Assembly (NCBI GenBank): GCA_002269645.1
Contig: NIVC01002724.1
Span: forward strand, 56,461 to 120,460
Direction: 5' to 3'
Length of the DNA stretch: 64,000 nt
DNA from: Macrostomum lignano
Lineage: Eukaryota
Position numbers and translations under genes: made by a program. The notes under the pieces were generated by a model. It saw only the letters and a list, made by a program, of their open reading frames with translations, was not told the origin of the DNA and ran no database searches. Below are positions 14,851 through 51,500 of this stretch, piece by piece (positions within the stretch are counted from its first letter, which is position 1; each line of letters starts with the position of its first letter).

Positions 14851-15999
14851 GGGATCTACGACGTTTGCCTGCCGGACGTCTGCCAGCCGACGTTTGCCAG
14901 CGAGACGTTTGCCAGCCGACGTTTGCCAGCTGACGTTTGCCAGCCGACGTTTGCCAGCCGACGTTTGCTAGCCGACGTTTGCCTGCGAGACTTTTGCCAG
15001 CCGACGTTTTCCAGCCGACGTTTGCGTGCGGGACGTTTGCCAGCCGACGTTTTTCAACCGACGTTTGCGTGCGGGACGTTTGCCAGCCAGACATTTGCAG
15101 ACGGCAATTGGTTAAAGAAGTCTGCCCTCTCTAGACTTACATGTACTTGCATTTGAAAACTGTGGACATAGCACTAATCTAATTCCACCTCGCTCCCTAC
15201 TACTGCTATTAAATATACAGGTTACTAACAAACTACGGTTCAGGCTTATTGAAGTTATTGCTCTTTTCTGCCTAAATACAAAAATACAAAATAGGAGTTT
15301 CCATTGTCACAGTTGATGTCTATGTATGCCATGAAATCGCCCTTTCCATCTCAGTGGCCAAACAAGCTAAGTGTTTACAAGCTAAATGGGAAAAGACTGA
15401 GACATCCATAATGGTATTGGCCTAGTCTCGCCTATATATACTTAACTCAAAAGCCAAACTCTGCTTAAAGGAGTTTGGCCATGACAGCGTGCACTTGACA
15501 AACTGCATTGGAATTAATTCGCTTACTTTTGGATCTCCCAATGAACTGGGAAATATGTAAGCCAGAATTATCGTTCAGCAGTGCTTTTATTTGCCCAAAA
15601 CTTGGCTCGCTGGAGATTCCCGTTTAAATTTGCGTGTCTTCATTCGCAAATCAGAAATCAAACTTCTCAAACTAGGAAAAGCGATACAAAACTGTCAGAA
15701 GTAAACTTTATGATATTTTCACATTCAAAGAAATTGTTGTTAAACTGGATGCTAGATTGATGAACTGCATAATTTGGATAGATTTTGTTTTCGAACTTTT
15801 ATACATGTGAATAACCGTCAAAAAGTTGGACTAAAAATCGCTAAACTGCGAATATTTCAGTATCAATTTTTTCACTCACTGACCTAATGTTGGCTGGCAA
15901 ACGTCGGCTAGCAAACGTCCCGGAGGCAAACGTCGGCAGGCAAACGTCGGCTGGCAAACGTCGGCTGGCAAAGGTCCCGCAGGCAAACGTCGCTATCCC
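14851..15999. mobile_element. Putative non-autonomous TIR element with inverted arrays of a 14-bp subterminal repeat (GCCAGCCGACGTTT), splitting the G-rich satellite
   Basis: Left end GGGATCTACGACGTTTGCCTGCCGGAC versus reverse complement of right end GGGATAGCGACGTTTGCCTGCGGGAC; 14-bp arrays at 14860-15105 (+) and 15890-15995 (-); TSD not resolved. Confidence 0.65.
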
Positions 16000-21765: not shown

Positions 21766-22780
21766 CATATCTAAGGACTGACGTGACACAAAGGACTTAT
21801 ATGTTTATAACGTGACCCATTGTTGATAAGTGAATGCTGTGGCAGAAGGCACATTGATGGTACATTAAAGAAGGTTGTGCCAGACAGCAAGCAGACAACC
21901 TACTGACTACTCCCTAAAATTTTAGGTTTAGCAAAGTTTTCTTACACTTTTTAGCACTCATTTAGTAAAAATCTAAGTCCATTGTTTGACTCAAGATACT
22001 CTAGTTCAGTTTGAAAAATAAATAAAACGATTTTTGAAGACTTAAACAAACAAAATTCTTTTTTATAAATCGTAGCAAAAATCATATTTTATTATTGTAT
22101 AAATAGCCGTTTAAAAGAACTGTTAAGTGAGTAGCCAAAAGTTACAAAAATGGCACAAATAATTTTTAGCGCACTACTGACAAAGTAGAGTACGTGTCTA
22201 TTAAAGGAATTTTTGTTCAATAAAGCATACGATTTGAAAGAGCTTAAAAATTATTAGTGTGGTAATTCTTGACATTGATCAAATTTAAAGAGCTGTTCAC
22301 AACTAGGAACCTGAATAAGTGGGCAAACAATACAAAAATCACTGTTACTTCCATCAGCAATGAAAAGCATTCGATTCTTGAATCACGAAAAAATCCCAAA
22401 TTTCAAAGATCCCCAAAATCTTCAAGTTCCCAAAACTCTCAAAGATCCCTAAAAATGTTAAAGATCCCCAAAATCTCAAAGATCCTTTAAATCTCAAAGA
22501 TTCCTAAAATCTCAAAGATCCCCAAAATTTCAAAGATCCCCAAAATATTAGAGATACTAAACTAAACCCCTCCAGATCTAAAACATCCCATATCCCATAG
22601 AACTTTTAACATCCCGTAGTTTATTCAGATTCGCAGTATTTTTCTTAACCAACGTAAAATTAACAAACATCAATTGGCAGTGCAATCAATCTGATTTAAA
22701 TTATAATAATTCACATTTTTATCGAAACCAACTAAACTAGTTAAGGTAAAAAACTAATGTCCATAACTCAATCAAGGTAA

Positions 22781-25402
22781 CTACAGGTGATCGAAGTTAT
22801 CAATTCTTTGAGCTTCAACCAGACGAATCATTGGAACAACAGCAGCCTGCTCAGCAGATTTATACTTCAACTGAGCATCATCTTTCGCTGGCAGACTATT
22901 GGCACTGCTAATACTCAGATTAGCAAAGCACGCTAAGCCGAAGTTCTCAGAGCCCAAACCGGCGAAACCGGTGCTTGGCGTGCTGCCAGGCAGCGTCTCC
23001 AAGTTCGCGACAGTTTGGTTTCCAATCTTTGCCGTGTACTTGCCGCTCTGCCATTGGTTGGGGCGCGATTGTGGGTTAATTGGGTCTTAGACTTTAGCCC
23101 CCCCAGCACCCCTGATGCTTCAGTGAGTTGTCACTGCCCCCCCCCCCCTGATGCTTCAGTGAGTTCTCACCGCCCCCCTTGATGCTTCAGTGAGTTGTCA
23201 CTGCCCCCCCCCGGATGCTTCAGTGAGTTGTCACTGATCCCCCCCTGATGCTTCAGTGAGTTGTCACTGCCCCCCCCTGATGCTTCAGTGAGTTGTCACT
23301 GACCCCCCCCTGATGCTTCAGTGAGTTCTCACCGCCCACCCCTGATGCTTCAGTGAGTTGTCACTGCCCCCCCCGGATGCTTCAGTGAGTTGTCACTGCC
23401 CCCTGATGCTTCAGTGAGTTGTCACTGACCCCCCCCCAATGCTTCAGCGAGTTGTCACTGCCCCCTGATGCTTCAGTGAGTTGTCACTGCCCCTCCCCCC
23501 TGATGCTTCAGTGAGTTGTCACTGCCCCCCCTGATGCTTCAGTGAGTTGTCACTCCCTCAGCTCCCCCTGATGCTGCAGTGAGTTGTCACTGCCCCCCCC
23601 CCTGCTGCTTCAGTGAGTTGTCACTGCCCCCCCCCCCTGCTGCTTCAGTGAGTTGTCACTGCCCCCTGATGCTTCAGCGAGTTGTCACTGCCCCCTGATG
23701 CTTCAGTGAGTTGTCACTGCCCCCTCCCCCCCTGATGCTTCAGTGAGTTGTCACTCCCTCAGCTCCCCCTGATGCTGCAGTGAGTTGTCACTGCCCCCCA
23801 CCCCTGCTGCTTCAGTGAGTTGTCACTGCCCCCCCCCTGCTGCTTCAATGAGTTGTCACTGACCCCCCCTGATGCTTCAGTGAGTTGTCACTGCCCCCCC
23901 CTGATGCTTCAGTGAGTTGTCACTGCCCCCCTGATGCTTCAGTGAGTTGTCACTCCCTCAGCCCCCCCCCTGATGCTTCAGTGAGTTGTCACTCCCTCAG
24001 CCCCCCCCTGATGCTTCAGTGAGTTGTCACTCCCTCAGCCCCCCTGATGCTTCAGTGAGTTGTCACTCCCTCAGCACCCCCTTATGCTTCAGTGAGTTGT
24101 CACTGCCCCCCTGATGCTTCAGTGAGTTGTCACTCCCTCAGCACCCCCCTGATGCTTCAGTGAGTTGTCACTCCCTCAGCCCCCCCCCTGATGCTTCAGT
24201 GAGTTGTCACTCCCTCAGCCCCCCTGATGCTTCAGTGAGTTGTCACTCCCTCAGCACCCCCTTATGCTTCAGTGAGTTGTCACTGCCCCCCCCTGATGCT
24301 TCAGTGAGTTGTCACTCCCTCAGCCCCCCCTGATGCTTCAGTGAGTTGTCACTCCCTCAGCACCCCCTGATGCTTCAGTGAGTTGTCACTCCCTCAGCCC
24401 CCCCCCCCTAATGCTTCAGTGAGTTGTCACTCCCTCAGCCCCCCCCCTGATGCTTCAGTGAGTTGTCACTCCCTCAGCACCCCCTTATGCTTCAGTGAGT
24501 TGTCACTGCCCCCCTGATGCTTCAGTCAGTTGTCACTCCCTCAGCACCCCCTTATGCTTCAGTGAGTTGTCACTGCCCCCCTGATGCTTCAGTGAGTTGT
24601 CACTCCCTCAGCACCCCCTTATGCTTCAGTGAGTTGTCACTGCCCCCCTGATGCTTCAGTGAGTTGTCACTCCCTCAGCACCCCCTTATGCTTCAGTGAG
24701 TTGTCACTGCCCCCCCCCTGATGCTTCAGTGAGTTGTCACTCCCTCAGCACCCCCCTGATGCTTCAGTGAGTTGTCACTCCCTCAGCACCCCCCTGATGC
24801 TTCAGTGAGTTGTCACTCCCTCAGCACCCCCCTGATGCTTCAGTGAGTTGTCACTCCCTCAGCCCCCCCTGATTCTTCAGTAAGCCAAATAACAATACTC
24901 ACCTGCAAATTCAGCGTCAACTTCACCCAGGCATCGTAGCCATAGACAAAACTGCCTCCTTTGATCTTCTTGGTTTGAGCTGTGAAAGCAGAGTAAGCCA
25001 GGTAAGTAGGTAAGTAAGTAAGTCAGGTTGGCCCTGACGGCTGTGAATCGCACATCTCCAAAAGCCCAAAATAAATTCGGCCGCGAATGTAGGCCGCTCA
25101 CCTAAGTCATTAGTAACGGCATACTGGTTGCTAGCCGGAAACAGCCACAGGAAGAGGCCTTTGGCTTGGAAAGCACCGCAGCCGCCTTGGTCAATGCGGG
25201 CAGCAACAAAAATTCCTGTGGTGGAATTCACAGAGGGGACCAGCACGGAGGCGGACACGGAGATGTCAGACCTGCGGGTTGCGTTTGTAATCTGTTTCAA
25301 TTGCTGTTGCTGGGGCAAACGGCAGCAATGATTGGCTGAGCTCTGCTTTTTAGTAAGACACGTAGTTGGGAATAACACATTAATAGATACTTATTACAAA
25401 TG

Positions 25403-26170: not shown

Positions 26171-29100
26171 CACAGACACACAAACAAGCAACAGGAACAG
26201 ACTCCACCAGATAATCAATAAATTAAGAGCACAACAAATTAGCCAATAGCAAGTAGCAGCACACAGACCAGTTGCCCATAACAGTGTAAGGGCTGGTCAG
26301 TCTCAGTGGGCACCAGTTCAATGTGGCCAGTGTGACCACCTGGCAGAGGGCCTGCGGCTGGGCGGACACTTCAGATGCGCCGCCACTCAACTTGACAGCT
26401 TCAAAGAAGCCGGCCTGAGGAGTGAGAAAGCTGGGCGACTGGCCCACACTGAGGTCTAAAAACATAATTTTTTATTTCTTTTTAGAGTTCTTTTATTCTT
26501 TAAATTTTAACTTTTATAATTTTTACGAGTAGCAGATAAACAAAAAATGTGTCTATTGTTTTTAAGACTTTGCTTTGACCAACAAATTGGTTTCGAGTAC
26601 AATGCTCACGGTAATTAGATGGCAACTGGTCTGTGTGCTCAATTAAACAAAATAAATATAAATTAACACCATGTAAATTAAAATGCGTTAGTATGTGTTT
26701 ACTACTTGATTAGTCAAGTTAAATCACTAGAAAATATTATTAGCAACGTTTAGCAATGAAGATTACTAAAACAACTTCATTATTTTTATTGATACATAGG
26801 TTTTTATCTACTTAGACTGTCTTATAAATCTGTCACTGATTCTTATCTACCTGCCCTGTAATTACGAGCTATATATCTGATATCTGATATAATTTTCTAT
26901 CTACCTGGTATCTACCTGCCCTGTAATTATCTACGTGTTATCTACTTGCCCTGTAATTATCTACGTGTTACCTACTTGCCCTGTAATTATCTACGTGTTA
27001 TCTACCTGGTATCTACCTGTCCTGTAATTATCTACGTGTTATCTACCTGGTATCTACCTGCCCTGTAATTATCTACGTGTTATCTACCTGGTATCTACCT
27101 GCCCTGTAATTATCTACGTGTTATCTACCTGGTATCTACCTGCCCTGTAATTATCTACCTGATATCCATCTGCCCTGTAACTATCTATCTATATCTGCCC
27201 TGTAACTATCTATCTATATCTGCCCTGTAACTATCTATCTATATCTGCCCTGTAACTATCTATCTAGATCTGCCCTGTAATTATCTATCTACCTGCCCTG
27301 TAATTAATGATGCCGATCTACCGAGTCTCGGGTTGTATAGGAAAGCAAATAGCAAATTTCTACTACTCCGAATAAAAAATCTCACCAATTATAATTGCCA
27401 ATAACGGCAATTGGTTGAGACTGTTTGCACCAGTCCACAGGCTGCTGCAACACAGTCTGCATTAAGCATTGCTTATTAACGTTATAATGATCGATAATGC
27501 TACGCCCGTTACCGACAGTGGGCGGAGAGTCGACTATCTCAAAACTGCCAACCTGTGGCACCAGATTAAGCGGATTTGAGCCGGGCTGATAGTCTGAGAG
27601 GCGAGAATATCATGGATATATATATATATATGTATTGCATCATTTGATAAAATACACTCACCCTACTAACAGTAGTGAAAAATCAAATCAAGGCATTGCA
27701 AAAATTCACGACGCCACAAAACCAGAATGTTTCAAAATTTGACTTCTCGGTGTATTCAAGTTTAAATTTGTAGGTCAAAGCATAGCCTTAAGTAAGTTGA
27801 ATTAAGTTACATTAATTTATGTTGAAACTGTTACAGTCATGGGATAGGGATTCTGCAACTATGGGACTGGGATTCTGTAGTTATGGGATTGGGATTCTGC
27901 AGTCATGGGATTGGGATTCTGCAACTATGGGATTGGGATTCTGTAGTCATGGGATTGGGATTCTGCAGTTATGGGATTGGGATTCTGCAGTCATGGGATT
28001 AGGATTCTGCAGTTATGGGATTGGGATTCTGCAGTTATGGGATTAGGATTCTTCAGTTATGGGATTGGGATTCTGCAGTTATGGGATTAGGATTCTTCAG
28101 TTATGGGATTGGGATTCTGCAGTTATGGGATTAGGATTCTGCAGTCATGGGATTGGGATTCTGCAGTTATGGGATTAGGATTCTGCAGTCATGGGATTGG
28201 GATTCTGCAGTTATGGGATTAGGATTCTTCAGTTATGGGATTGGGATTCTGCAGTTATGGGATTAGGATTCTGCAGTCATGGGATTGGGATTCTGCAGTC
28301 ATGGGATTGGGATTCTGCAGTTATGGGATTGGGATTCTGCAGTTATGGGATAGGGATTCTGCAGTTATGGGATTAGGATTCTGCAGTTATGGGATTAGGA
28401 TTCTTCAGTTATGGGATTGGGATACTGCAGTTATGGGATTAGGATTCTGCAGTCATGGGATTGGGATTCTGCAGTTATGGGATTAGGATTCTGCAGTCAT
28501 GGGATTGGGATTCTGCAGTTATGGGATTGGGATTCTGCAGTTATGGGATTGGGATTCTGCAGTTATGGGATTAGGATTCTTCAGTTATGGGATTGGGATT
28601 CTGCAGTTATGGGATTAGGATTCTGCAGTCATGGGATTGGGATTCTGCAGTTATGGGATTAGGATTCTGCAGTCATGGGATTGGGATTCTGCAGTTATGG
28701 GATTAGGATTCTGCAGTCATGGGACTGGGATTCTGCAGTCATGGGATTGGGATTCTGCAGTCATGGGACTGGGATTCTGCAGTTATGGGATTGGGATTCT
28801 GCAGTTATGGGATTGGGATTCTGCAGTCATGGGACTGGGATTCTGCAGTTATGGGATTGGGATTCTGCAGTCATGGGACTGGGATTCTGCAGTTATGGGA
28901 TTGGGATTCTGCAGTTATGGGATTAGGATTCTGCAGTCATGGGACTGGGATTCTGCAGTCATGGGACTGGGATTCTGCAGTTATGGGATTGGGATTCTGC
29001 AGTTATGGGATTAGGATTCTGCAGTCATGGGACTGGGATTCTGCAGTTATGGGATTAGGATTCTGCAGTTATGGGATTGGGATTCTGCAGTCATGGGATT

Positions 29101-32100
29101 GGGATTCTGCAGTCATGGGACTGGGATTCTGCAGTTATGGGATTAGGATTCTTCAGTTATGGGATTGGGATTCTGCAGTTATGGGATTAGGATTCTGCAG
29201 TCATGGGACTGGGATTCTGCAGTCATGGGACTGGGATTCTGCAGTTATGGGATTAGGATTCTGGAACTATGGGATTGGGATTCTGCAGTTATGGGATTAG
29301 GATTCTGCAGTCATGGGATTGGGATTCTGCAGTCATGGGATTGGGATTCTGCAGTCATGGGATTGGGATTCTGCAGTCATGGGATTGGGATTCTGCAGTT
29401 ATGGGATTAGGATTCTGCAGTCATGGGATTGGGATTCTGCAGTCATGGGATTGGGATTCTGCAGTCATGGGATTGGGATTCTGCAGTCATGGGATTGGGA
29501 TTCTGCAGTCATGGGATTGGGATTCTGCAGTTATGGGATTAGGATTCTGCAGTTATGGGATTAGGATTCTTCAGTTATGGGATTGGGATTCTGCAGTTAT
29601 GGGATTAGGATTCTGCAGTCATGGGATTGGGATTCTGCAGTCATGGGATTGGGATTCTGCAGTTATGGGATTGGGATTCTGCAGTTATGGGATAGGGATT
29701 CTGCAGTTATGGGATTAGGATTCTGCAGTTATGGGATTAGGATTCTTCAGTTATGGGATTGGGATTCTGCAGTTATGGGATTAGGATTCTGCAGTCATGG
29801 GATTGGGATTCTGCAGTTATGGGATTAGGATTCTGCAGTCATGGGATTGGGATTCTGCAGTTATGGGATTGGGATTCTGCAGTAATGGGATTGGGATTCT
29901 GCAGTTATGGGATTAGGATTCTGCAGTCATGGGACTGGGATTCTGCAGTTATGGGATTAGGATTCTGGAACTATGGGATTGGGATTCTGCAGTTATGGGA
30001 TTGGGATTCTGCAGTCATGGGACTGGGATTCTGCAGTTATGGGATTAGGATTCTGGAACTATGGGATAGGGATTCTGCAGTTATGGGATTGGGATTCTGC
30101 AGTTATGGGATTAGGATTCTGCAGTCATGGGACTGGGATTCTGCAGTTATGGGATTAGGATTCTGCAGTTATGGGATTGGGATTCTGCAGTCATGGGATT
30201 GGGATTCTGCAGTCATGGGACTGGGATTCTGCAGTTATGGGATTAGGATTCTTCAGTTATGGGATTGGGATTCTGCAGTTATGGGATTAGGATTCTGCAG
30301 TCATGGGACTGGGATTCTGCAGTCATGGGACTGGGATTCTGCAGTTATGGGATTAGGATTCTGGAACTATGAGATTGGGATTCTGCAGTTATGGGATTAG
30401 GATTCTGCAGTCATGGGATTGGGATTCTGCAGTCATGGGATTGGGATTCTGCAGTCATGGGATTGGGATTCTGCAGTCATGGGATTGGGATTCTGCAGTT
30501 ATGGGATTGGGATTCTGCAGTTATGGGATTGGGATTCTGCAGTTATGGGATAGGGATTCTGCAGTCATGGGATTGGGATTCTGCAGTTATGGGATTGGGA
30601 TTCTGCAGTTATGGGATTAGGATTCTGCAGTCATGGGATTGGGATTCTGCAGTCATGGGATTGGGATTCTGCAGTCATGGGATTGGGATTCTGCAGTCAT
30701 GGGACTGGGATTCTGCAGTCATGGGACTGGGATTCTGCAGTTATGGGATTAGGATTCTGGAACTATGAGATTGGGATTCTGCAGTTATGGGATTAGGATT
30801 CTGCAGTCATGGGATTGGGATTCTGCAGTCATGGGATTGGGATTCTGCAGTCATGGGATTGGGATTCTGCAGTCATGGGATTGGGATTCTGCAGTTATGG
30901 GATTGGGATTCTGCAGTTATGGGATTGGGATTCTGCAGTTATGGGATTAGGATTCTGCAGTCATGGGACTGGGATTCTGAAGTCATGGGACTGGGATTCT
31001 GCAGTTATGGGATTAGGATTCTGGAACTATGGGATTGGGATTCTGCAGTTATGGGATTAGGATTCTGCAGTCATGGGATTGGGATTCTGCAGTCATGGGA
31101 TTGGGATTCTGCAGTCATGGGATTGGGATTCTGCAGTCATGGGATTGGGATTCTGCAGTTATGGGATTGGGATTCTGCAGTTATGGGATTAGGATTCTTC
31201 AGTTATGGGATTGGGATTCTGCAGTTATGGGATTAGGATTCTGCAGTCATGGGATTGGGATTCTGCAGTCATGGGATTGGGATTCTGAAGTTATGGGATT
31301 GGGATTCTGCAGTTATGGGATAGGGATTCTGCAGTTATGGGATTAGGATTCTGCAGTTATGGGATTAGGATTCTTCAGTTATGGGATTGGGATTCTGCAG
31401 TTATGGGATTAGGATTCTGCAGTCATGGGATTGGGATTCTGCAGTTATGGGATTAGGATTCTGCAGTCATGGGATTGGGATTCTGCAGTTATGGGATTGG
31501 GATTCTGCAGTTATGGGATTGGGATTCTGCAGTTATGGGATTAGGATTCTTCAGTTATGGGATTGGGATTCTGCAGTTATGGGATTAGGATTCTGCAGTC
31601 ATGGGATTGGGATTCTGCAGTTATGGGATTAGGATTCTGCAGTCATGGGATTGGGATTCTGCAGTTATGGGATTAGGATTCTGCAGTCATGGGACTGGGA
31701 TTCTGCAGTCATGGGATTGGGATTCTGCAGTCATGGGACTGGGATTCTGCAGTTATGGGATTGGGATTCTGCAGTTATGGGATTGGGATTCTGCAGTCAT
31801 GGGACTGGGATTCTGCAGTTATGGGATTGGGATTCTGCAGTCATGGGACTGGGATTCTGCAGTTATGGGATTGGGATTCTGCAGTTATGGGATTAGGATT
31901 CTGCAGTCATGGGACTGGATTCTGCAGTCATGGGACTGGGATTCTGCAGTTATGGGATTGGGATTCTGCAGTTATGGGATTAGGATTCTGCAGTCATGGG
32001 ACTGGGATTCTGCAGTTATGGGATTAGGATTCTGCAGTTATGGGATTGGGATTCTGCAGTCATGGGATTGGGATTCTGCAGTTATGGGATTAGGATTCTT

Positions 32101-35100
32101 CAGTTATGGGATTGGGATTCTGCAGTTATGGGATTAGGATTCTGCAGTCATGGGACTGGGATTCTGCAGTCATGGGACTGGGATTCTGCAGTTATGGGAT
32201 TAGGATTCTGGAACTATGGGATTGGGATTCTGCAGTTATGGGATTAGGATTCTGCAGTCATGGGATTGGGATTCTGCAGCCATGGGATTGGGATTCTGCA
32301 GTCATGGGATTGGGATTCTGCAGTTATGGGATTGGGATTCTGCAGTTATGGGATTAGGATTCTGCAGTTATGGGATTAGGATTCTGCAGTTATGGGATTG
32401 GGATTCTGCAGTTATGGGATAGGGATTCTGCAGTCATGGGATTGGGATTCTGCAGTTATGGGATTGGGATTCTGCAGTTATGGGATTAGGATTCTGCAGT
32501 CATGGGATTGGGATTCTGCAGTCATGGGATTGGGATTCTGCAGTTATGGGATAGGGATTCTGCAGTCATGGGATTGGGATTCTGCAGTCATGGGATTGGG
32601 ATTCTGCAGTTATGGGATTGGGATTCTGCAGTTATGGGATTAGGATTCTGCAGTCATGGGACTGGGATTCTGCAGTCATGGGACTGGGATTCTGCAGTTA
32701 TGGGATTAGGATTCTGGAACTATGGGATTGGGATTCTGCAGTTATGGGATTAGGATTCTGCAGTCATGGGATTGGGATTCTGCAGTCATGGGATTGGGAT
32801 TCTGCAGTCATGGGATTGGGATTCTGCAGTCATGGGATTGGGATTCTGCAGTTATGGGATTGGGATTCTGCAGTTATGGGATTAGGATTCTGCAGTCATG
32901 GGACTGGGATTCTGCAGTCATGGGACTGGGATTCTGCAGTTATGGGATTAGGATTCTGGAACTATGGGATTGGGATTCTGCAGTTATGGGATTGGGATTC
33001 TGCAGTTATGGGATTAGGATTCTGCAGTCATGGGATTGGGATTCTGCAGTCATGGGATTGGGATTCTGCAGTTATGGGATTAGGATTCTGCAGTCATGGG
33101 ACTGGGATTCTGCAGTCATGGGACTGGGATTCTGCAGTTATGGGATTAGGATTCTGGAACTATGGGATTGGGATTCTGCAGTTATGGGATTAGGATTCTG
33201 CAGTTATGGGATTGGGATTCTGCAGTTATGGGATAGGGATTCTGCAGTCATGGGATTGGGATTCTGCAGTTATGGGATTGGGATTCGGCAGTTATGGGAT
33301 TAGGATTCTGCAGTCATGGGATTGGGATTCTGCAGTCATGGGATTGGGATTCTGCAGTCATGGGATTGGGATTCTGCAGTCATGGGATTGGGATTCTGCA
33401 GTTATGGGATTGGGATTCTGCAGTTATGGGATTAGGATTCTGCAGTCATGGGACTGGGATTCTGCAGTCATGGGACTGGGATTCTGCAGTTATGGGATTA
33501 GGATTCTGGAACTATGGGATTGGGATTCTGCAGTTATGGGATTAGGATTCTGAAACTATGGGATTAGGATTCTTCAGTTATGGGATTGGGATTCTGCAGT
33601 TATGGGATTGGGATTCTGCAGTTATGGGATCGGGAGTCTGCAACTATGGGATTAGGATTCTGGAACTATGGGATTGGGATTCTGCAGTTATGGGATTAGG
33701 ATTCTGCAACTATGGGATTAGGATTCTGAAACTATGGGATTAGGATTCTGCAACTATGGGATTGGGATTCAGCAGTTATGGGATTAGGATTCTGCAACTA
33801 TGGGATTAGGATTCTGCAACTATGAGATTGGGATTCTGCAGTTATGGGAGCAAGCTCTTAGGAGACATGACGCTTAATATATTATGTAACAAGCATTAAG
33901 GTAAATTAAAAAAAGATTTTATATTGTCAAAAACAGATTGACTTGAATATTATCTTACTCTGAAAATTGTCGCTATAAGGCAGAGGAAAGGGCTTCGATG
34001 GCGGAGGCTGAGAACGCTGGCCTTTAGTTGCCGTAGCAACTGTCGATAGAGTTACGACAACGTCAACATCGAGGAACAGAGTCAGTTGTCCAGATTTTAC
34101 CTGAATTTGAGATTAATTTGTTCTAATTACTGCTCGGGAGGGGTAGAGGTTGCCTGGTTAATGTACGTTGGGGCTGATTGGCTCGGGAGGGGTAGAAGTT
34201 GGCTGGTGGATGCACATTGGGGCTGATTGGCTCGGGAGGGGTAGAAGTTGGCTGGTGGATGTACATTGGGGCTGATTGGCTCGGGAGGGGTAGAAGTTGG
34301 CTAGCGGATGTACACTGGCTCTGATTGGCTCGGGAGGGGCAGAAGTAGGCTATCGGATGTACATTAGGGCTGATTGCTTTGATCTTTTGATAATAAAATC
34401 AAACTACTTTTCTCACCTGCAACGGACTCTGTTTAACAAAATAACTCGACGAAACGCCTTTCTTATAGCTAAGAACGGACTTCCAATAATAAAGCTGAGT
34501 GATAGAAGCAAATGCGCCAGCCAGTTTGATGGTGACATTCTGCGGCTTCACAGTGTAAGGCGGCAGTGACGGCCTAATGCACTCGGAATGATCGTGACTC
34601 TGTGGGAAAATGAAATAGCAGTAATTATTATTGACTTGTTCTTTAATAAAGAGATAAATTTGCAAACTACTCTACTTAAATAGTCTTATAAGTACGGTAT
34701 CCCAAATATTTATGATCATTTTATGCTCAATAAAATTTTAAAGGGCAGGGTGTAGTACGAAAAAAATCTACATTGTTTCGCTTTTCAAATTTTAGATTAT
34801 CTTACAAGCAAACATAAACCTTAGAAATTTAGTCTTTTTGGATTAACGCTAAAAATCTTATAAAAATGTTTCAACTACACTACTGAATGACGCAAGTAGT
34901 GTACGTAACATTTTATTGCTCAAACTAGAAGTTGTAGCCTAGTGGTTAAAGCGTCGAACTCACGACTGAAAGGTCGGGGTTCGATTTCTCGACCTTACTC
35001 GGAACAATTTGTGTCCCTGAGCAAGCAGCTGTAAAATTGGTGCCAGCATTAGCTGGGCTAGGGTGTGTGTGGCGACCCCCCCCCCAGTCCTTGGACTGAA

Positions 35101-40707: not shown

Positions 40708-43700
40708 ATGCTGAAACTGTTTCTTAGAATCTTCGCCTGTTGCAGCGTTGTTGAATTCTGGTTCGCGGCTGACGCACAGTCAATCGGTGAGTTGATTATC
40801 CAGTTTGTTGGGACGCTTTTAGCACTGCCGACCGACCCGACGTAAGCAAAATGAGACGTCGACCCGAAGCTCAGCAAAATGCACACAGATACGTAGGATA
40901 GCACACGCTCTGCAAGATGGTTGAGAGCTCGGATCAGCTTACCTCCCTCTCATCTCGACAGGTGCCGCCCAGCTCGACCAGCTCAGCCGGTCTCCGATGG
41001 GCCTCGGCCGCTACTTCCCCGTCTCCTGGGTCGTTCTCGGCAGCAGCGAAACTGATCAGGGCCTGGTGTCGCTCAGCTTCCGAGCCGAGCCAGGCGGACC
41101 CACAGCTCAGGGCGCCCTCCTGAACGGCGACAAATGGGTCCGGATCTACTTTCCTCTGAACTTCACGGTCACTGGCTTTCTGGTGTTCAGCAACATCAGC
41201 AGGGCGGCGAACTCGAGCCCGGTGACCCATTTCTACGCTGGCCACTCGCCCAAGAAATCGCTGATGACCACTTCGCCCGTGTACTCGGCTGACGCATTCA
41301 ACAACAAGGTGAGTCACTGCGATTATAAACTTTATGCACTTGTCTGTTCTCCACTTGGTTTAGTAGCAAGGATTTTTTTTGTAAATTTAACTCTATTATA
41401 TTGGTATTTACGAATTCGGCAAATTATGTCAATATATTCCTAGACACATACACACAAACTCATTTAGTTAGTAACTTTTAGAACATCTTTCGAGCATTGT
41501 CTTAAGCACTGCGACGCTTTTCATCTGATCTGTGAGAAGTCTTCCTAAATGTTGTTTATCGCTCGCAATGATATTTGGTAAGCTATTGCAAATGCTTCTG
41601 ATGCTGGAGAGCATCGCGATCGACTTCCAGAAGCAAAGGTGGGTAGGGGGTGGGGTTCGAGGCCCCCTTTACCTCTCCCCCACCTGGCCAAAGCCCTTGA
41701 AGTTTTATATGCGCTCGAAAAAAGTTTTGTGTTTCCAGAGCCCTGCTTCAGGGTTTCCAGCTAAGCTACTTGTTAACTTACTTTTCATGTTGAATGACAA
41801 GCCTCTTGAAGAAGTATTATATTATTTGATTATAGGTTTTGTGTTTTTTCATAAAAAAGAAAGACATCCGGGAATCGTCGGTTTCCAGTGCATGCCGCGG
41901 CATTTGAGCTGTAAACCGTGTTTAAGCCAAGTTTTGAGAAGTCAATTTTATCCTTCCTTCTTTTTTCTATTTATCTATCTTCTATCTACCTATATTTTAT
42001 ATCTATCTATATAAATAAAGTTGGATCCATCTATTTTCTATCTATCTATATACCTATACTATCTTCTTCCATCTTCCAGATTCAACCGATTGACCAATTT
42101 TGATCGCGTTTTCGCTAAAAGACTTGCAATTATCTGGAAGGAAGACAGTTAAATTTTTTAAATCTACTTTAATGCTAAAGGCATTAAATATTCGAAAAAC
42201 GAGTTTCTCCAATGCTTTGAAGGGATGGCTCATGGGGAATTGCTGAGATGCCAAGACTTATGTGGAGAATTACTGGAATGCAGTTGCTCATGGGAGAATG
42301 GCTCAAGCTGTGAGTTTTTAGCAATTAAGGTTAAGTTAGCGATAGGGTTAAACCATAAAAGAATCCCCCGGTCGTCTATAAAGACTTATGCGTGGGCGAA
42401 TTGCTATTGCCCAGTGGTCTGGCGCACGCTCTGATGTGCCAGCGGCCCAGGCTCGATTCCAAGTTAGAGAGTAAAGACCCAGGAGGTGGATTCTGGAGGG
42501 TAAAGACCCAGAGGGGGGGCATTCACATTAATTTGAGACTAAATTGGTAACCTCGGCTCGTGCAATTAACGCACTTAAGGGCCAACCCCCAAGGCACAGT
42601 GAAGTGTACATGCCTAACGATAAATAAAGTTAGGGCCGCTGTACACTCCTGTGAGAGTGTGTGCCCGTGTGTATGACTGCGTACGTGTCCACGCGCTTGT
42701 GTGCCTGCTCAGGGAAGTCGCGGAATGGGCAGCAATGCCTCTCGCCGGTTGTCTGTTGCTTAAGTGCGCCAAGGTGCACACAACCCCTGCGTCTTTTGAA
42801 ACATAGCAAAAAACTATTCATTGGCTAAGCGACTGTCTCGCTCAAAACGACAAGGCTCTTTACAACTGCTTGGAGATTATATTAAAGAAAAGTTCCGACA
42901 AGGCTTCGATTTTGTGAAATAAAATACACTATTGCCATGCGCATACAAACTTCACAGTGCTTTCTCGAATTTACGGCTCGTAGATCCAATATTGATTTTT
43001 GCATTCTCCATCAGCCAAACGTTTGTCAGTTTCCACACTCCAAATTTACTTTGTAGAACCTGATCCATACCGGTAGATGACTGCAGTTGGCACCCAGTGC
43101 AGCTTTGTACAGGATCGTAGAGAAAATTGTGAAAATTCTGTTAGATTAAGTTTCATTATCTAAACTCAATTCAGATCCGGTTGTGAAACTCAAATAAGAA
43201 ATCTACATGCAGCAGCAAACTCTGATATTCAACACCGATCCAGACGAGACCAACTATAAAAGTTTTCCCAGTGCGTTCAGTTTTTGTAGACGCTACAAAA
43301 TGCCTGAAGGATCGATCTTATATTGAAATTAGAAGTCGTCTGCTAAATCGTTTCCCACATTTGGTTAATTATAGTATTCACTGACTCATGGGGGAGATTG
43401 TTGAGATTTCAAGGCCTAATTTGGAGTTGCTTGGTAGGTAGCAGTGGCGTAGCCAGGAGGGGGGAGCCGGAGGGCCGCGGCCCCCCCCCCCCAATCGCCT
43501 GGGGGTGGCGTTGGGCGCGGCGATACCAAAAACCATGAGGCAATTGAGTGCCTGCGGCGCTAAATTGAGTGCCTGCGGCGCTAAAATGAGTGACTGCGGC
43601 GCTAAAATGAGTGCCTGCGGCGCTAAAAATGAGTGCCTGCGGCGCTAAATTGAGTGCCTGCGGCGCCAAAATGAGTGCCTGCGGCGCCAAAATGAGTGCC

Positions 43701-46700
43701 TGCGGCGCTAAATTGAGTGCCTGCGGCGCCAAAATGAGTGCCTGCGGCGCCAAAATGAGTGCCTGCGGCGCCAAAATGAGTGCCTGCGGCGCTAAAATGA
43801 GTGCCTGCGGCGCCAAAATGAGTGCCTGCGGCGCTAAAATGAGTGCCTGCGGCGCCAAAATGAGTGCCTGCGGCGCCAAAATGAGTGCCTGCGGCGCCAA
43901 AATGAGTGCCTGCGGCGCCAAAATGAGTGCCTGCGGCGCCAAAAGTGGCAATGGCATAAGGCATGGCCAGCCAGGCCAACCCGACCCCCCCCCAATTGAA
44001 ATTCCTGGCTACGCCACTGGTAGGTAGGCCAAGCATCAACGGGAGATTTACGGTTAAGTCATAGCTTAAATTGAGTCTTTGAGGCCGAGGTTCACAGGGC
44101 CTGATGCTATTTTGCTAAAAACGTCATTTTCCTTGAAGATAACAAATAACAATAGCGACCGTATACAATCTCAAAACCTGCATGTAGTTTATTGAAACAT
44201 TTATTATTCTATTCTTTTTTGCCTCCCCAACGGGGAGCGCAGATTGAAAGTCACATCTAACTATGAATCAGTGTGTCCAAACGCCTTTGTTCTGACTTGG
44301 CTTGTCTCAACCATTTTTTACTTCTAAATTCGTTTAGCGATACTGGTCCCAGCGTCTACTCTGCCCAGCCGTGACGTCAGAAGCCTTTCACTGGACCGCA
44401 TCATCGTGTTCTCCATATTTCGCATAATTCGCGTCTCCAATCCTTTTAGCCTCAACCGCTTAGTTAGTTTAGTTTGGGGTGGCCCTGAAAAGGGCCGTTT
44501 GACTTTCCAGTCAGTCTTTTTGATGCACAAAACCTACAGGTCGCTTGCCGTGTCGCCTTTGCCTTTTATGTAGAATGGGGGTGGTTGCTTTGGTTGGCTT
44601 CTGCTATTCAATTTATTGGCTTTATCGGTTTTTCCCTGGGTGGCCCTTTCTTATGGATTTCTAAACGCGGCCTAAAAGCTCGATCCATTCTCTGCTCTAA
44701 CACCTGTTTGTGGTTATAAAATAGCCCACATTTCCCTCAATAGACTGTGCCACCCACACAGTCTGTGTCCTATTGAAACTCTAAGCAAAGCAATCACAAG
44801 CAACTAACCAAGTTTGCGACACTCTACTGCTACAGTAGCAGTTAGTAGTATGATTGAAATCCGACAATTCTTTTCCTTTAAGCTAGCTATGTACGAGATA
44901 AGAAGAATATAAGCAAATAAGATACTTCTTTGCATTTCTTTAGATTGGTTTTTTTAAATTGTTGCATATACGAATGTATTCAAGCATTTAGTCATTTCCA
45001 GTGTCACCGGTGTCGCATTTGAACACTGTATTTGGGGAGACGAAGCAATAAAACAAAAGCAGTTTGAAAAGGAAAGCAGATCGCAGCTGATCAAACTGAA
45101 CGGATAACTGATAGGGCAGAAAATAAGCAAAATCATTTTGCTGTGAATGTCCTTGAAATTAGCCAAGTATCTTACGAGTATCATTATCTACCGGTCTTAC
45201 TGTCGTGGCTACAGATGACTGAGAACATGGTTTTCTTTTCAACTCACCATAAACTTACCAAAGCTTTTACACTAATCATTTTAATTCCTTGTATTTTACC
45301 CTTCCACCCCCAGACCGAGTACTCTGTATCGTGCGCCAACACGGACAAGTCGCCCTGTCTCGTAGCGCTCAACAGTCCATTTGAAACCCAGTTGGCTTAC
45401 TTTGAAGCAACAAACTGCAATACCAGTTGCATTCTGCAGCTTGACTTAATTGGCCATCCAAGTCCTAATGGTGAGTGAAAATTGATCCAACCTTCGTTAT
45501 CCACTGTTGTTGATTGTTTTTAGCTTCCGTAAAAACAACGGATCTGATTCCGATGCAAACTGTTTAAATCGAAGCAATGGTGCACGCAGGGAATTTTAAT
45601 TAGAATGGACCGCAGTCCTAAGGTACGCCAATATTTGGTGTCATGGTGGGCGCCTCTGTCTCTTCGAACCTATCCCTCGGTGCGCGCCACTATTCCTGTC
45701 TCATTGGCCAGTGGATGCCACGTCCAAAAGTTGCCACGTGCACGTCAATGCAAAATTGAGCTCCTGTCATTCGTCGAGATTGGTTGCCTCCTTCACTTAC
45801 TCTTATTTTTTGGAGGGACTTCTGTGTACGCCACTATTAAAGGGTTACTAGCTACGCAAGTTAACTTTGTTAACAGGTCGAATCTAAAATCACTAGATAA
45901 GAATTACGAGTAGATACAGAAATTCCCTAAAATTCGGCCAAAGCTTTGGATGTCTGTCCAGAAACTCTAGAGAGTCTTGCTGGAATTAACCCTAGAGTAA
46001 ATTTTTTTACTTGTAAGTTCTTGAAGTTGAAGATTCGAAACTCTGATCACATGCTGAGATGCGTTGTTATGAAATGTGCGACATACTAATGTTTAGAATT
46101 TTGAGAAACTTCTAAGCGTAACGTGAGACGGAAGTCGATAGCGTCAACTTCCGTCTGCAGGTCAACAAATCGCAGATTTAGTTTTACTGCGTACACTTTT
46201 GTTTGAGCGTCTGCAATGTAAAACATTCGATGTTAAACTTCAGCTTGCCCAGTTATCAACAGCTCAGACTACTCAAAATCTGGGCTCTGGAGCAGCCGCT
46301 CAGAGACTCTGCTGCAGCTAAACTTCTCGCGGATTCACTACGTGACTGCCTTCACGCTTGTCAACCTGCCAGCTGGCGGCAGCTTCTGGGTGTCCTACCA
46401 GCTGGCGGCCGGCAAGGGCTTCGTCAATCTGACTCACGCCTGGAATGACAGCCTGTGGATTGTAAGATTCTCAGAAAATAAAATATAGTGACTGTAGTCG
46501 GTAAGAGACCCGGTTGTTGGGTCGTGTGGACACAAAAAATTGCCCACACTGGCTTTGGGAGAGAGTGAAGAGAGTGAAGCCAGGATACAGAGGCGTTGGG
46601 ATAAACAATGAATCTCTTGAGGTTCAGCGCTGACAGAAGTACAATACCCCTAAACTGTAGCACCGTAGCCGTTGGTCGCCGTTAGGATCATCACTTGTCT

Positions 46701-48547: not shown

Positions 48548-51500
48548 ACTCACTCTAGTCTGTCAGTCAGTCAGATTTCATAAAAATGGATGAAACTGGA
48601 TCAACTGGATTGAAGTTCGATAAATTGAAGTTCAATGCGCCCTATTCACACTGGTCCATGGTACGTGTACGTTGGGTGACGAGCAGCTTCTTACAAAAAA
48701 ACAACAGGAGTTCCGGAAGCGACGCCAGCTACTTCAGTTATTTTCACACGGGTCTCAAGCGTAACGCCAGCAACAACCAGTGGGTCTGGGGTGACGGCAC
48801 CCAGCCTGAGGTTGGCGCCTTCTACATGGGCCGGCCCGCGCCCAACTGTGCCGCGCTGGACACTTTCACCGGAGCCATGGTGGACGTCACCTGCGGCCTG
48901 CAGCTCAAATTCATCTGCCAGATCGATAAGTACATTGGTGAGCGACTTGGCTCAAATTGGATGAATTTTAACGTTGAATACTTCTCTTAGTTACTTTGAT
49001 TTTGTTTGATTTTACAGAATCACCAAACGACTGGCATGCGATCCAGCTGAGCAGTGGTTCCACGTGTGACTATACAAGGAAGGATAATATCACTACCGTG
49101 TCTGGAATGTTTCAAGCCCTTCGCCTGCTGAACTTGGACAGCCAGAGTAGCAAACATGTGGAGTGCGGATCCAGCTGCACTTTTGTCATGAGTTCGCCCG
49201 ACGACTGTTCTAGAAGCAGGGCGTACAAGATCAAATACTATCAAATGCAGGGAAGGCAGAGTGAGTTTTCTGTTATTTTTTGCAACTATAAGCCCAAACC
49301 TTAATTTGAATGAAAGTTATGTATATGTACATGTTCTTCGATTGTTACTTACTGTTGTTAACAGTAGAAAGACCATTGGGGTGTATTTCAAATACACATA
49401 TTTTTCCTTTGTCTGGATCTGCAAAAATATTCAACCAGTTGCCATGAAAATCCAGAACACGGGCTAAAATTTTCTGCTCTATTCGATGAAGCAACTTCAA
49501 AAATCACGAAAAATCGGCATCGTCGAGATATTCAACGATTCTCCTTGGGGTGTCTGGTGGCAAAACCACCAATATTGGCAAAATTTTTCTGCTCACAAAA
49601 TCTCATCACGAAACCACGTCGGCTCAAAAAACTATACATATCAGTCGCAGGGACTTTGCTCTCAGCATCCCAGGCACCAGGGTCCCCTTCATCATCGTCT
49701 GGAGCATCGGCGGCGACCGTCAGGATCTTCAACAAAAGCACCCGATCGGCATCTCAGAGACGGCTGCGTTCCCAAAACTGAAATGGAAGAATCCTATCCT
49801 GCATGCAACATTCAGTCAGTAGGCATAATCGGTGAATGAAATGGACGATGGCTACCCTCTAGGCTGACCTGTAGACATACAGGCGACCTTCGGGACCTTC
49901 AACGGAGTGTCACCACGCGGCCCCGACGAGCTGAAACCCCCCGACATCGTGATTTTAACATGGTGCAGGACCATCGTATAATATGCAGACATGCCTGGTT
50001 TGGTGCCTTGATAGAAAAATCACGATGTTGGCGGTGTCAGCTCGTCGGGGCCGCGTGGTGACACTCCGTTGAAGGTCCCGAAGGTCGTCCAGACAGAGCT
50101 GAATGCTGAACACGATGAGGACCATTGTATAATATGCAGACATGCCTGGCTTGGTGCCTTGATAGAAAAATCACGATGTTGGCGGTGTCAGCTCATCGGA
50201 GCCGCGTGGTGACACTCCGTTGAAGGTCCCGAAGGTCGCCTGTATGTCTACAGGTCAGCCTAAAGGGTCGCCATCGTCCATTTCATTCACCGATTATGTC
50301 TACTGACTGAATGCTGCATGCAGAAGAGCATTCTTCCATTTCAGTTTTGAGAATGCAGCCGTCTCTGAGATGCCGATCGGGTGCTTTTGTTGAAGATCCC
50401 GACGGTCGCCGCCGATGCTCCAGACGATGATGAAGGGAACCCTGGTGCCTGGGATGCTGAGACCAAAGGCCTCTACGACAGATTGACCCAGATTATTGAG
50501 CCAATATGGATTCACCATAAAGGTTTATACAGTGTAGTGTTGGTTGTCCTTGCCACCAGTGTCTTCGACAAGAATCGTTGAATATCTCGACGATGCTGAC
50601 GTCGCATGACTTTGAAAGTTAATTCGTCGAAAATGGCGGAAAATATTGAATTATATGGTAGACTTTTATGAAAATCGGTAATTCGGTTTGCGAGCTATCG
50701 TGAAATAGGTCGTGTGTATTTGTAATACACCCCCGTGGTCTTCCCCATGGGGAAAAATAGCGTGTTCTTTCTACTGTTACGAGTAATTGGTTTTGTAGCT
50801 AGTTTTAAGCAGTTAATTAATTTTAGTTTTTAAAATAACCGTTCTTTTATCGATAAAGTACATGGATACAGTAAACGTAAAGCTGGAGTTCGTCCATCCG
50901 TCATCCACCCATCCATCGAAATTCCATCCATCATAAAGACTCAAAGCATGTTGAAAAATAGTAGCTAATTTCATTTCTGTTTCCAATGCATAACGATTTG
51001 TCATTGCTTGCTCGGTTCTTCAGACTGCATGCAGCCTCTGCTTCCTGGCATTCCCGGCCAACTCGAGGTGGCTGTGTCAGCCTCCAGCAGCAATTACAGG
51101 CGCGGTCCAGAGACTGCCCTTCTAGGAGCAACTCTCAACTATGAAGGTGCGATGCCAGAATAGTTTACCTGATTTTATAAAAGCTGTCACAATAACCCAA
51201 TGACCGATCCAAAACCAAACAGATCACCTAAAGTGCACCGTAGTTGGAGGCGACTCAAACTTCTACGACTATGGCGTCACGATGACCGCCTCAGGAAGAG
51301 CGTGCGTACCTTGGACTGGATCGAATTCTGCATTCAATCGGTCCTGCGTCACTCGTGAGTATAGATTTATGAGAAACTGTAGAACAATGACCAGTTAGAG
51401 TACAGGGAAAAGACACTTCTAGGAGGCGAAATTGAAAGCTTTGAGGTCTAATGATTTCAAAACAAAATATAATTCAGTAATGATTTCTGTTTCTGGCTAA

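What the first reader, a model, noticed from the sequence alone, without database searches (positions are those of the whole stretch)
26258..26639. Perfect 19-bp inverted repeat that would sequester the exon 8B donor
Plus-strand 26258-26276 (AGCACACAGACCAGTTGCC) is the exact reverse complement of 26621-26639 (GGCAACTGGTCTGTGTGCT), both in non-repetitive DNA. In the pre-mRNA, the intronic copy upstream of 8B pairs with the last 8 exon nt plus the first 11 intron nt (GGCAACTG|GTCTGTGTGCT), looping out the whole exon with its acceptor. This is a concrete RNA-structure switch for 8A/8B choice, analogous to docking/selector pairing in other mutually exclusive clusters. If the weak donor is read through, the frame ends in a short hydrophobic tail ([15 protein letters not shown]).
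Basis: partly seen in the sequence, partly recalled or inferred. Interest (0 to 1): 0.8.

Follow-up and report, generated by a model that had tools for sequence, protein, structure and literature searches.

The report
RNA stem masking alternative exon donor

Summary
Window 26258-26276 and 26621-26639 are a perfect 19/19 inverted repeat. It is unique in the window and lies outside the tandem repeats.

The window is Macrostomum lignano contig NIVC01002724.1. The gene is a galactocerebrosidase (GALC, GH59) on the minus strand, with 11 exons and a duplicated exon 8: 8A at 27593-27386 and 8B at 26455-26269. Both have the same phase, and including both or neither breaks the frame.

RNA-seq-derived GenBank models use 8A in two genomic copies and 7->8B->9 in a third, at exactly the predicted junctions. 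So the downstream arm does cover GGCAACUG|GUCUGUGUGCU, the weak 8B donor. The helix is -37.7 kcal/mol and has pair probability about 0.99 in a 1.6-kb fold.

The A/B exon pair is ancient. Abalones and Pomacea have isoforms that differ only in this exon, and mussel and brachiopod proteins carry the same A/B signatures. In abalone a different, conserved 21-bp helix loops out exon B.

Function in M. lignano is unproven. The three copies are too similar for covariation. In the one related transcript the intronic half of the arm differs. There is no shared docking site, so this is an exon-masking or looping-out stem rather than a docking/selector system.

Verdict: a new member of a known kind, moderately interesting.

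The parts
26621..26639 (-). Upstream (5') arm of the 19-bp helix I2. In RNA sense it reads AGCACACAGACCAGUUGCC. It lies in the intron between 8A and 8B, 165 nt upstream of the 8B acceptor.
26258..26276 (-). Downstream (3') arm of I2. In RNA sense it reads GGCAACUG|GUCUGUGUGCU: the last 8 nt of exon 8B plus the first 11 nt of the intron, covering the 5' splice site.
26269..26455 (-). Exon 8B (187 nt, B-type). It has a weak A-rich acceptor (uuauguuuuuag|AC) and a weak donor (CUG|GUCUGU).
   Evidence: used in the transcript-based model P0123
27386..27593 (-). Exon 8A (208 nt, A-type) with strong splice sites (cucucag|AC ... UUG|GUGAGA). It is used in the annotated proteins P0001 and P0121.
27765..27791 (-). 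Arm a of the second helix I1, 171 nt upstream of the exon 8A acceptor.
26562..26588 (-). Arm b of I1 (25 of 27 positions pair, including one G-U; -30.7 kcal/mol). It lies 32 nt downstream of the I2 upstream arm. Pairing with arm a would loop out exon 8A.
26223..26268 (-). In-frame read-through of the 8B donor ([14 protein letters not shown], then stop). It would give a GALC truncated near the start of the lectin domain.
   Evidence: a related species' transcript shows read-through of the homologous donor
33959..34100 (-). Constitutive exon 7 (donor CAGA|GUAAGA, phase 1).
25102..25271 (-). Constitutive exon 9 (acceptor cccgcag|G).
26898..27303 (-). Tandem array inside the 8A-8B intron. Its RNA-sense units carry repeated pseudo-donor motifs (CAG|GUAGAU). 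Any role is unknown.

Best explanation
The inverted repeat forms a long-range RNA helix in the Macrostomum lignano GALC pre-mRNA. The upstream arm is transcribed first, inside the intron between exons 8A and 8B. About 360 nt later the 8B donor emerges, and it can pair perfectly over positions -8 to +11. This would hide an already weak 5' splice site from U1 snRNP and enclose exon 8B, with its poor acceptor, in a 344-nt loop. Exon definition of 8B would then fail by default. The strong 8A donor would splice to exon 9, giving the 8A isoform. 8B would be included only when the helix is prevented or removed, for instance by a helicase or RNA-binding protein, or by prior use of the 8B acceptor, which excises the upstream arm with the intron. 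Shown: the helix exists in the sequence, is highly stable, covers the donor, and both isoforms exist. Inferred: that the helix forms in vivo and changes the 8A/8B ratio.
For: Perfect 19/19 complementarity, unique in the window and far beyond chance. The duplex is -37.7 kcal/mol. It extends to -44.3 with flanking pairs that reach about 25 nt into the exon. It is present in the minimum-energy and centroid folds of a 441-nt fragment (z = -3.0), and has mean pair probability 0.99 in the 1644-nt fold spanning both exons. The complementarity of the proximal intron to the 8B end and downstream region exceeds all 200 shuffles (z = -5.2), while the control pairings do not. The 8B donor is weak and the 8A donor strong. 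8A and 8B are a true mutually exclusive pair: same phase, with both or neither giving premature stops. RNA-seq-derived models show 7-8A-9 and 7-8B-9 (annotation method in PMC5730564). Both arms are intact in all three genomic copies. The pair is ancient, and in abalone an unrelated helix of 21 nt loops out the B exon. Its arms are conserved islands in otherwise unalignable introns of three species. Of the four substitutions seen in the upstream arm, two keep pairing (A-U to G-U, G-U to A-U) and two, both in H. rubra, break distal pairs. So RNA-structure control of this cluster has a precedent. Weak hint: the last 9 codons of 8B keep 6 of 7 synonymous sites against a related species, compared with 14 of 27 elsewhere.
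Against: There is no covariation test. The three copies are 97-99% identical, so intact arms are expected by chance with P about 0.1-0.3. In the related transcript L001, 15 of the 19 arm positions are identical, but beyond intron position +7 only 1 of 4 matches. The perfect helix is therefore lineage-specific or young. 8B is nevertheless spliced at this donor in an assembled transcript, so any block is partial. A short inverted duplication would produce the same sequence with no selected function. No experimental or read-level data were available here.
Confidence: 0.5

Rival explanations
1. Neutral by-product. A short inverted duplication (template switch) copied the 8B exon-intron junction into the upstream intron shortly before the recent genome duplication of M. 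lignano. The repeat is perfect because it is young, and any effect on splicing is incidental and not selected.
For: The match is perfect and ends abruptly, as expected for a recent copy. The intronic part of the arm is not conserved in the related transcript. The genome is rich in repeats and rearrangements (PMC5730564). Intact arms in the three copies carry no statistical weight.
Against: A -37.7 kcal/mol helix over a weak donor is unlikely to have no effect if it forms. It sits exactly at a regulated alternative exon. A second non-random complementarity (I1) shares the same 78-nt intronic segment. The abalone orthologue uses a conserved helix at the same exon pair.
Confidence: 0.3
2. Two-helix hub. 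The 78-nt segment 26562-26639 pairs either with a site upstream of 8A (I1, looping out 8A and favouring 8B) or with the 8B donor (I2, masking 8B and favouring 8A). This would be a bidirectional switch that enforces mutual exclusivity.
For: In I1, 25 of 27 positions pair, at -30.7 kcal/mol. Its blastn E-value is 1.7e-4 in the local search. The complementarity of the 8A-upstream segment to the proximal intron exceeds all 200 shuffles (z = -3.1). The arms are ordered I1a, I2a, I1b, I2b, so the helices cross. In a nested fold I2 excludes I1 completely. Both I1 arms are intact in all copies.
Against: The two helices do not share nucleotides, and with loops of 1125, 32 and 285 nt they could coexist as a pseudoknot. 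Both exons would then be hidden and the frame lost. I1 is AT-rich and much less significant than I2. There are no conservation data.
Confidence: 0.15
3. The flanking complementarity promotes back-splicing, producing a circular RNA of exon 8B.
For: Inverted repeats that bracket an exon are the usual trigger for exon circularisation (general knowledge). The arms bracket 8B.
Against: The downstream arm contains the donor itself, so the helix would hide the site needed for back-splicing. No circular junction evidence is available.
Confidence: 0.03
4. The arms are the terminal inverted repeats of a small DNA transposon (MITE).
For: The size (382 bp) and short perfect terminal repeats are MITE-like. 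Two other isolated short inverted repeats in the window are associated with repeats.
Against: There is no target-site duplication (flanks ...caagtagc and caattaaa...). It is single-copy in the window. The interior is a coding exon homologous to the B-type exon of molluscs and a brachiopod. One 'terminal repeat' includes conserved codons (GNW) shared with a related species.
Confidence: 0.02

Closest known systems
Chicken beta-tropomyosin exons 6A/6B: a secondary structure around exon 6B represses it (Libri et al. and Clouet d'Orval et al., 1991; cited from my own knowledge)
   Same: A two-exon mutually exclusive pair in which an RNA helix between the upstream intron and the downstream member of the pair hides that exon, making the other exon the default.
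   Different: A different gene and phylum. Here the helix is a single perfect 19-bp duplex that directly includes the 5' splice site. No experimental support exists.
Docking-site/selector-sequence competing pairings (Dscam1 exon 6, 14-3-3xi, srp, Mhc; PMC4691838, PMC6071210)
   Same: Long-range intronic base pairing associated with tandem-duplicated mutually exclusive exons. Looping out brings the chosen exon into play.
   Different: No single docking site with a selector at each variant was found. The upstream arm pairs only with the 8B donor, and one arm is partly exonic. Those systems activate the selected exon, whereas this helix would repress one.
Human/mouse ATE1 exons 7a/7b, controlled by several competing and ultra-long-range helices (PMC7797038)
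   Same: A two-exon cluster with more than one helix. Structures sit close to splice sites and bias the exon ratio.
   Different: The ATE1 elements R1 and R4 compete for the same partner R3 and are conserved across mammals and validated by mutagenesis. Here the two helices use adjacent, non-overlapping segments and are unvalidated.
5' splice-site stem-loops (MAPT exon 10, SMN2 exon 7 TSL2; cited from my own knowledge)
   Same: A helix that includes donor positions limits U1 access at a weak donor.
   Different: Those are short local hairpins of a few base pairs. This is a 19-bp duplex closing a 344-nt loop that contains the whole exon.
Abalone (Haliotis) GALC A/B exon cluster helix, found here (L005 18671-18691 with 22331-22351)
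   Same: The orthologous exon pair in the same order. The helix also loops out exon B. It is similar in length (21 bp) and energy (-36.9 kcal/mol).
   Different: The arms are unrelated in sequence and position: one is just downstream of the A donor, the other deep in the intron between B and the next exon. The abalone helix does not touch the B donor, and it is conserved across three species, which could not be shown for the flatworm helix.

Membership tests
Mutually exclusive exon pair from tandem exon duplication | The two adjacent exons are homologous to each other. | tested here: met
   8A and 8B align over their full length with each other and with the single exon of other GALC genes. No residual DNA similarity remains, so the duplication is old.
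Mutually exclusive exon pair from tandem exon duplication | Same phase; inclusion of both or of neither destroys the reading frame. | tested here: met
   The exons are 208 and 187 nt, both 1 modulo 3. Translations with both or with neither hit stop codons.
Mutually exclusive exon pair from tandem exon duplication | Mature transcripts carry exactly one of the two exons. | tested here: inconclusive
   RNA-seq-derived GenBank models exist for 7-8A-9 (P0001, P0121) and 7-8B-9 (P0123). Read-level junction counts, and the absence of 8A-8B junctions, could not be checked.
Docking-site/selector competing RNA pairings | One docking site is complementary to a selector sequence next to each variant exon. 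| tested here: not met
   The complement of the upstream arm occurs only at the 8B donor. The proximal intron against the 8A donor region is not better than shuffles (z = -0.9).
Docking-site/selector competing RNA pairings | The pairings are mutually exclusive because they share nucleotides. | tested here: not met
   The I2 arm (26621-26639) and the I1 arm (26562-26588) are 32 nt apart. They cross topologically but do not overlap.
Docking-site/selector competing RNA pairings | The pairing is conserved or covaries across species. | tested here: inconclusive
   Only three 97-99% identical copies from the same genome and one spliced transcript of a relative lacking the upstream intron were available.
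Splice-site/exon-masking RNA stem | The helix includes the nucleotides recognised by U1 (-3 to +6 of the donor). | tested here: met
   The arm spans -8 to +11 of the 8B donor.
Splice-site/exon-masking RNA stem | The helix is stable and favoured in the context of the surrounding pre-mRNA. | tested here: met
   -37.7 kcal/mol. It is in the minimum-energy and centroid folds and has pair probability 0.99 in the 1644-nt context. These are predictions only.
Splice-site/exon-masking RNA stem | Disrupting the helix raises exon use, and restoring it lowers exon use. | not testable with these tools
   This needs a minigene or transgenic experiment.
MITE / terminal-inverted-repeat transposon | Target-site duplication flanking the terminal repeats, and multiple genomic copies. 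| tested here: not met
   The flanks caagtagc and caattaaa share no duplication. There is a single occurrence in the window. The interior is a conserved coding exon.

The most novel reading that the evidence does not exclude
GALC carries a mutually exclusive exon pair, at the start of its lectin domain, that dates back at least to the common ancestor of flatworms, molluscs and brachiopods. The choice between the two exons is governed in different phyla by independently evolved long-range RNA helices that all remove exon B from play. In Macrostomum the helix has moved onto the donor itself. Together with a second helix anchored in the same 78-nt hub, it would form a bistable switch that enforces 'one and only one' exon.
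Probability: 0.25. Interest if true: 0.7.

Novelty: new member of a known kind. Interest (0 to 1): 0.55.

Why it matters
RNA-structure control of mutually exclusive exons is documented mainly in arthropods and a few mammalian genes. A clear candidate in a flatworm would widen its known range. It sits on an exon pair that appears to be more than half a billion years old, and an independent, conserved helix acts on the same pair in abalone. The helix is short, perfect and sits on a defined splice site, and M. lignano can be made transgenic (PMC5730564). Disruption and compensatory mutagenesis is therefore a feasible, decisive experiment. The two exons encode alternative versions of the first strands of the GALC lectin domain, so the switch would also select between two forms of a lysosomal glycolipid hydrolase. 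I found no paper mentioning mutually exclusive exons in galactocerebrosidase.

Tried and rejected
1. A homologue search with the 84-residue 8B peptide plus read-through tail found nothing.

2. Exact look-ups of Pomacea X1 and X2 and of Lingula X2 failed, so those loci could not be examined.

3. The accession SRR30276804 is not mentioned in any paper searched, so the species of the related transcript is unknown.

4. Rfam gave no family at or near the repeat. The only hit was a sub-threshold SNORA67 match over exon 9 (E = 0.14), taken as chance.

5. The third weak inverted pair, 26646-26666 with 27812-27832 (76%, AT-rich), is not collinear with I1 and was treated as chance.

6. I looked for extended homology that would show a longer inverted duplication of the 8B end. 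Only about 9 extra pairs in 16 nt were found, which is not decisive.

7. I looked for a flatworm counterpart of the abalone helix (region just downstream of the 8A donor against the intron downstream of 8B). None exists, because that intron is mostly (UGUC)n.

8. The first duplex-shuffle script timed out. It was redone with mononucleotide shuffles.

9. The transposon, circular-RNA and pure-chance readings were considered and given low weight (see the rival explanations).

Full report
**Observation.** The window holds a perfect 19-nt inverted repeat, 26258-26276 (AGCACACAGACCAGTTGCC) and 26621-26639 (GGCAACTGGTCTGTGTGCT), with 344 nt between the arms. With up to three mismatches the sequence occurs nowhere else in the 64 kb; 0.03 matches are expected in dinucleotide shuffles. 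Neither arm lies inside a tandem array. This genome is extremely repeat-rich, so I checked the background rate. Outside satellites and large palindromes, only three isolated perfect inverted repeats of 17 nt or more within 2 kb exist in the window. The repeat is real and is not chance. It is probably the product of a small inverted copy or of selection.

**What the locus is.** Six-frame inspection and splice-site reading give a galactocerebrosidase (GALC, glycoside hydrolase family 59) gene on the minus strand.
- It has 11 constitutive exon positions, from 38606 to 22781.
- Two alternative versions of exon 8 are present: 8A (27593-27386, 208 nt) and 8B (26455-26269, 187 nt).
- Both start in phase 1 and both end with ...GN(YN)W split as TG|G.
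- Either exon alone gives an open frame (728 or 721 residues). Both together, or neither, give premature stops.

A protein search identifies the organism as the flatworm Macrostomum lignano. The window is 100% identical to GenBank contig NIVC01002724.1, gene BOX15_Mlig000813g2.

**Is 8B a real exon?** Yes.
- The genome has three near-identical copies of the gene: the window (= L003), L002 and L004. All three carry both exons.
- GenBank models for two copies (P0001, P0121) use 8A.
- The model for the third copy, BOX15_Mlig005578g1 (P0123), reads ...PYSDNFQ|NLSVGQ...TVMGNW|SDISVS... This is 7->8B->9, at exactly the acceptor and donor I had inferred.
- The GenBank annotation of this assembly is derived from a genome-guided RNA-seq assembly made with StringTie and TACO, not from ab initio prediction (PMC5730564).
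- A Logan transcript contig from run SRR30276804 (L001, protein P0002, 81% identical) comes from an unidentified relative. It joins exon 7 directly to a B-type exon, then reads through the donor (CTG|GTCAGT) for at least 230 nt.

**Anatomy of the helix.** In RNA sense the upstream arm (26639..26621) lies 747 nt downstream of the 8A donor and 165 nt upstream of the 8B acceptor. The downstream arm (26276..26258) spans positions -8 to +11 of the 8B donor.
- The duplex is worth -37.7 kcal/mol. With flanking pairs it reaches -44.3 and extends about 25 nt into the exon.
- It appears in the minimum-energy and centroid structures of a 441-nt fragment (z = -3.0 against shuffles).
- It has mean pair probability 0.99 when the whole 1644-nt interval from upstream of 8A to downstream of 8B is folded.
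- The 8B donor is weak: its U1 duplex is -3.4 kcal/mol against -8.1 for 8A and -9.5 for exon 9. The 8B acceptor follows an A-rich tract.

**A second complementarity.** A 27-nt segment 171 nt upstream of 8A (27791..27765) pairs at 25 of 27 positions (-30.7 kcal/mol) with 26588..26562. That partner lies only 32 nt downstream of the upstream arm of the 19-bp helix. This pairing would loop out 8A.
- Both complementarities beat all 200 shuffles (z = -3.1 and -5.2). Two control pairings do not.
- The two helices cross: the arm order is I1a, I2a, I1b, I2b. Nested folding therefore makes them exclusive.
- They share no nucleotides and could physically coexist, so a clean two-state switch is not established.

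**Conservation within Macrostomum.**
- All four arms are unchanged in the three copies. The copies differ by only 1-3% overall and about 4-6% in the adjacent intron, so this is nearly uninformative.
- Exon 8B differs between copies by three synonymous changes, plus one conservative V-to-I change in L004. This is consistent with a coding exon under constraint.
- In the related transcript, 15 of the 19 arm positions are identical. Beyond intron position +7 only 1 of 4 matches (GAAAT against GTGCT), and the upstream intron is not in the contig.
- The last nine codons of 8B are 25/27 identical between the species and keep 6 of 7 synonymous sites, against 14 of 27 in the rest of the exon. This is a weak hint of an extra constraint. 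A splicing enhancer would explain it as well as the helix.

**Wider comparison.** The exon pair is ancient.
- The Pomacea canaliculata RefSeq isoforms X1 and X2 differ only in this exon. The same holds in Haliotis cracherodii and H. asinina.
- The two types have recognisable signatures. B-type has WCP..L.(F/Y)P; A-type has WC.A(D/E)...N(V/I)IG.
- M. lignano 8B, the Macrostomum relative, a brachiopod and many gastropods carry B-type sequences. Mussel proteins from two Mytilus species carry one type each, followed by an identical next-exon sequence.
- M. lignano 8A, a liver fluke (Opisthorchis) and the mouse structure sequence carry the A type.
- In abalone genomic DNA the order is A then B, as in the flatworm.
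- The Opisthorchis locus has only an A-type exon.
- No paper in the searched library mentions mutually exclusive exons in galactocerebrosidase.

**The abalone helix.** In H. cracherodii a 21-bp helix (20 Watson-Crick pairs plus one G-U, -36.9 kcal/mol) pairs a site about 18 nt downstream of the A donor with a site in the intron between B and the next exon. It loops out exon B.
- Between H. cracherodii, H. asinina and H. rubra the introns are otherwise unalignable.
- Both arms nevertheless sit in conserved islands, and the downstream arm is identical in all three species.
- Of the four substitutions seen in the upstream arm, two keep pairing (A-U to G-U, G-U to A-U). Two, both in H. rubra, break distal pairs but leave a 13-bp core.

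This is decent evidence that RNA structure controls this exon pair in molluscs. It gives a precedent for a helix that removes exon B from play, although the flatworm and abalone helices are unrelated in sequence and placement.

**Most likely mechanism (confidence about 0.5).** The 19-bp helix represses exon 8B by occluding its weak donor and enclosing the exon in a loop. 8A is then the default. 8B is used when the helix is prevented, or when its intronic arm is removed.
- Shown: the sequence, the predicted stability, the overlap with the donor, and the existence of both isoforms.
- Inferred: formation in vivo and an effect on the isoform ratio.

**Rival explanations.**
- A neutral, young inverted micro-duplication (0.3).
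- The elaborated two-helix hub (0.15).
- Promotion of a circular RNA (0.03). This is disfavoured because the donor is inside the helix.
- Transposon terminal repeats (0.02). There is no target-site duplication, the unit is single-copy, and the interior is a conserved coding exon.

**Comparison with known systems.** It works like the exon-masking structure of chicken beta-tropomyosin exon 6B and like 5' splice-site stems (both from my own knowledge). It resembles the looping-out helices of arthropod clusters and of ATE1 (PMC4691838, PMC6071210, PMC7797038). It is not a member of the docking/selector class. There is no shared docking site with a selector at each variant, and the two candidate helices do not overlap.

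**Verdict.** This is a new member of a known kind: RNA structure at mutually exclusive exons. Its added value is that it lies on an apparently undescribed, very old GALC exon pair and that it can be tested directly in a transgenic flatworm.

Noticed in passing
window 27386-27593 and 26269-26455; loci L005, L006, L007; proteins P0023/P0041, P0013/P0128, P0129/P0022, P0017/P0027: The GALC exon 8A/8B pair is not specific to Macrostomum. Abalones and Pomacea have isoforms that differ only in the homologous exon, and mussel and brachiopod proteins carry the same A-type and B-type signatures. In abalone DNA the exon order is also A then B. This looks like a mutually exclusive pair dating to the lophotrochozoan ancestor, and I found no paper describing it.
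   Followed up: partly
L005 18671-18691 with 22331-22351 (also L006 and L007): A conserved 21-bp long-range helix in abalone GALC loops out exon B. Its arms are conserved islands in otherwise unalignable introns of three Haliotis species, and two of the four upstream-arm substitutions preserve pairing.
   Followed up: partly
window 27765-27791 and 26562-26588: A second inverted repeat (25 of 27 positions pair, -30.7 kcal/mol) joins the intron upstream of 8A to a site 32 nt from the upstream arm of the 19-bp helix. It would loop out exon 8A, and it crosses the first helix.
   Followed up: partly
window 26898-27303: A tandem array in the intron between 8A and 8B has RNA-sense units that repeat a donor-like motif (CAG|GUAGAU) about 20 times. 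These could be decoy U1 sites.
   Followed up: no
window 27834-33849: A 6-kb satellite of 22-bp units fills most of intron 7. The array is much shorter in the homeologous copy L002 (gene span 10.2 kb against 15.8 kb).
   Followed up: no
window 26190-26268: The roughly 80 nt downstream of the 8B donor are identical in all three M. lignano copies, whereas the intron upstream of 8B differs by 4-6%. This could reflect constraint or gene conversion.
   Followed up: no
L001 1760-2001: In the related species' transcript the 8B donor (CTG|GTCAGT) is read through for at least 230 nt, adding a 50-residue tail before a stop. 8B may double as a terminal or retained-intron exon that gives a GALC truncated near the start of the lectin domain.
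   Followed up: partly
L005 21229-21257: About 190 nt downstream of the abalone B exon there is a pseudo-donor, CCAACTGGTCTGT, that shares a 12-mer with the flatworm 8B donor. It is not conserved in H. asinina and is probably coincidence.
   Followed up: partly
L008 (Opisthorchis felineus GALC locus): Only an A-type exon is detectable, with no B-type copy. This suggests the alternative exon was lost in this parasitic flatworm.
   Followed up: partly
window 3-212 and 1730-1999 (minus strand): Two exons of a haloacid-dehalogenase-family phosphatase that resembles LHPP by eye (Pfam Hydrolase_6, E = 2.4e-11, for the second exon).
   Followed up: partly
window 60503-62248 (plus strand): Open frames resembling a family B DNA polymerase motif, plus a weak adenovirus-type cysteine protease match (PF00770, E = 1.4e-3, below the family cut-off). 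This may be a fragment of a Maverick/Polinton-like element.
   Followed up: partly
window 49466-50647; 14859-15992; 43442-44019: A large near-perfect palindrome (291-nt arms, 94%), inverted blocks of a 14-bp satellite, and a 17-nt inverted repeat bracketing a 21-bp satellite. That satellite recurs inverted at 52849-53291. All look transposon- or satellite-related.
   Followed up: no
proteins P0122 and P0124 (older M. lignano gene models): These database proteins are chimeras that begin with 8A sequence and continue with 8B sequence. They are probably prediction artefacts caused by the duplicated exon.
   Followed up: no
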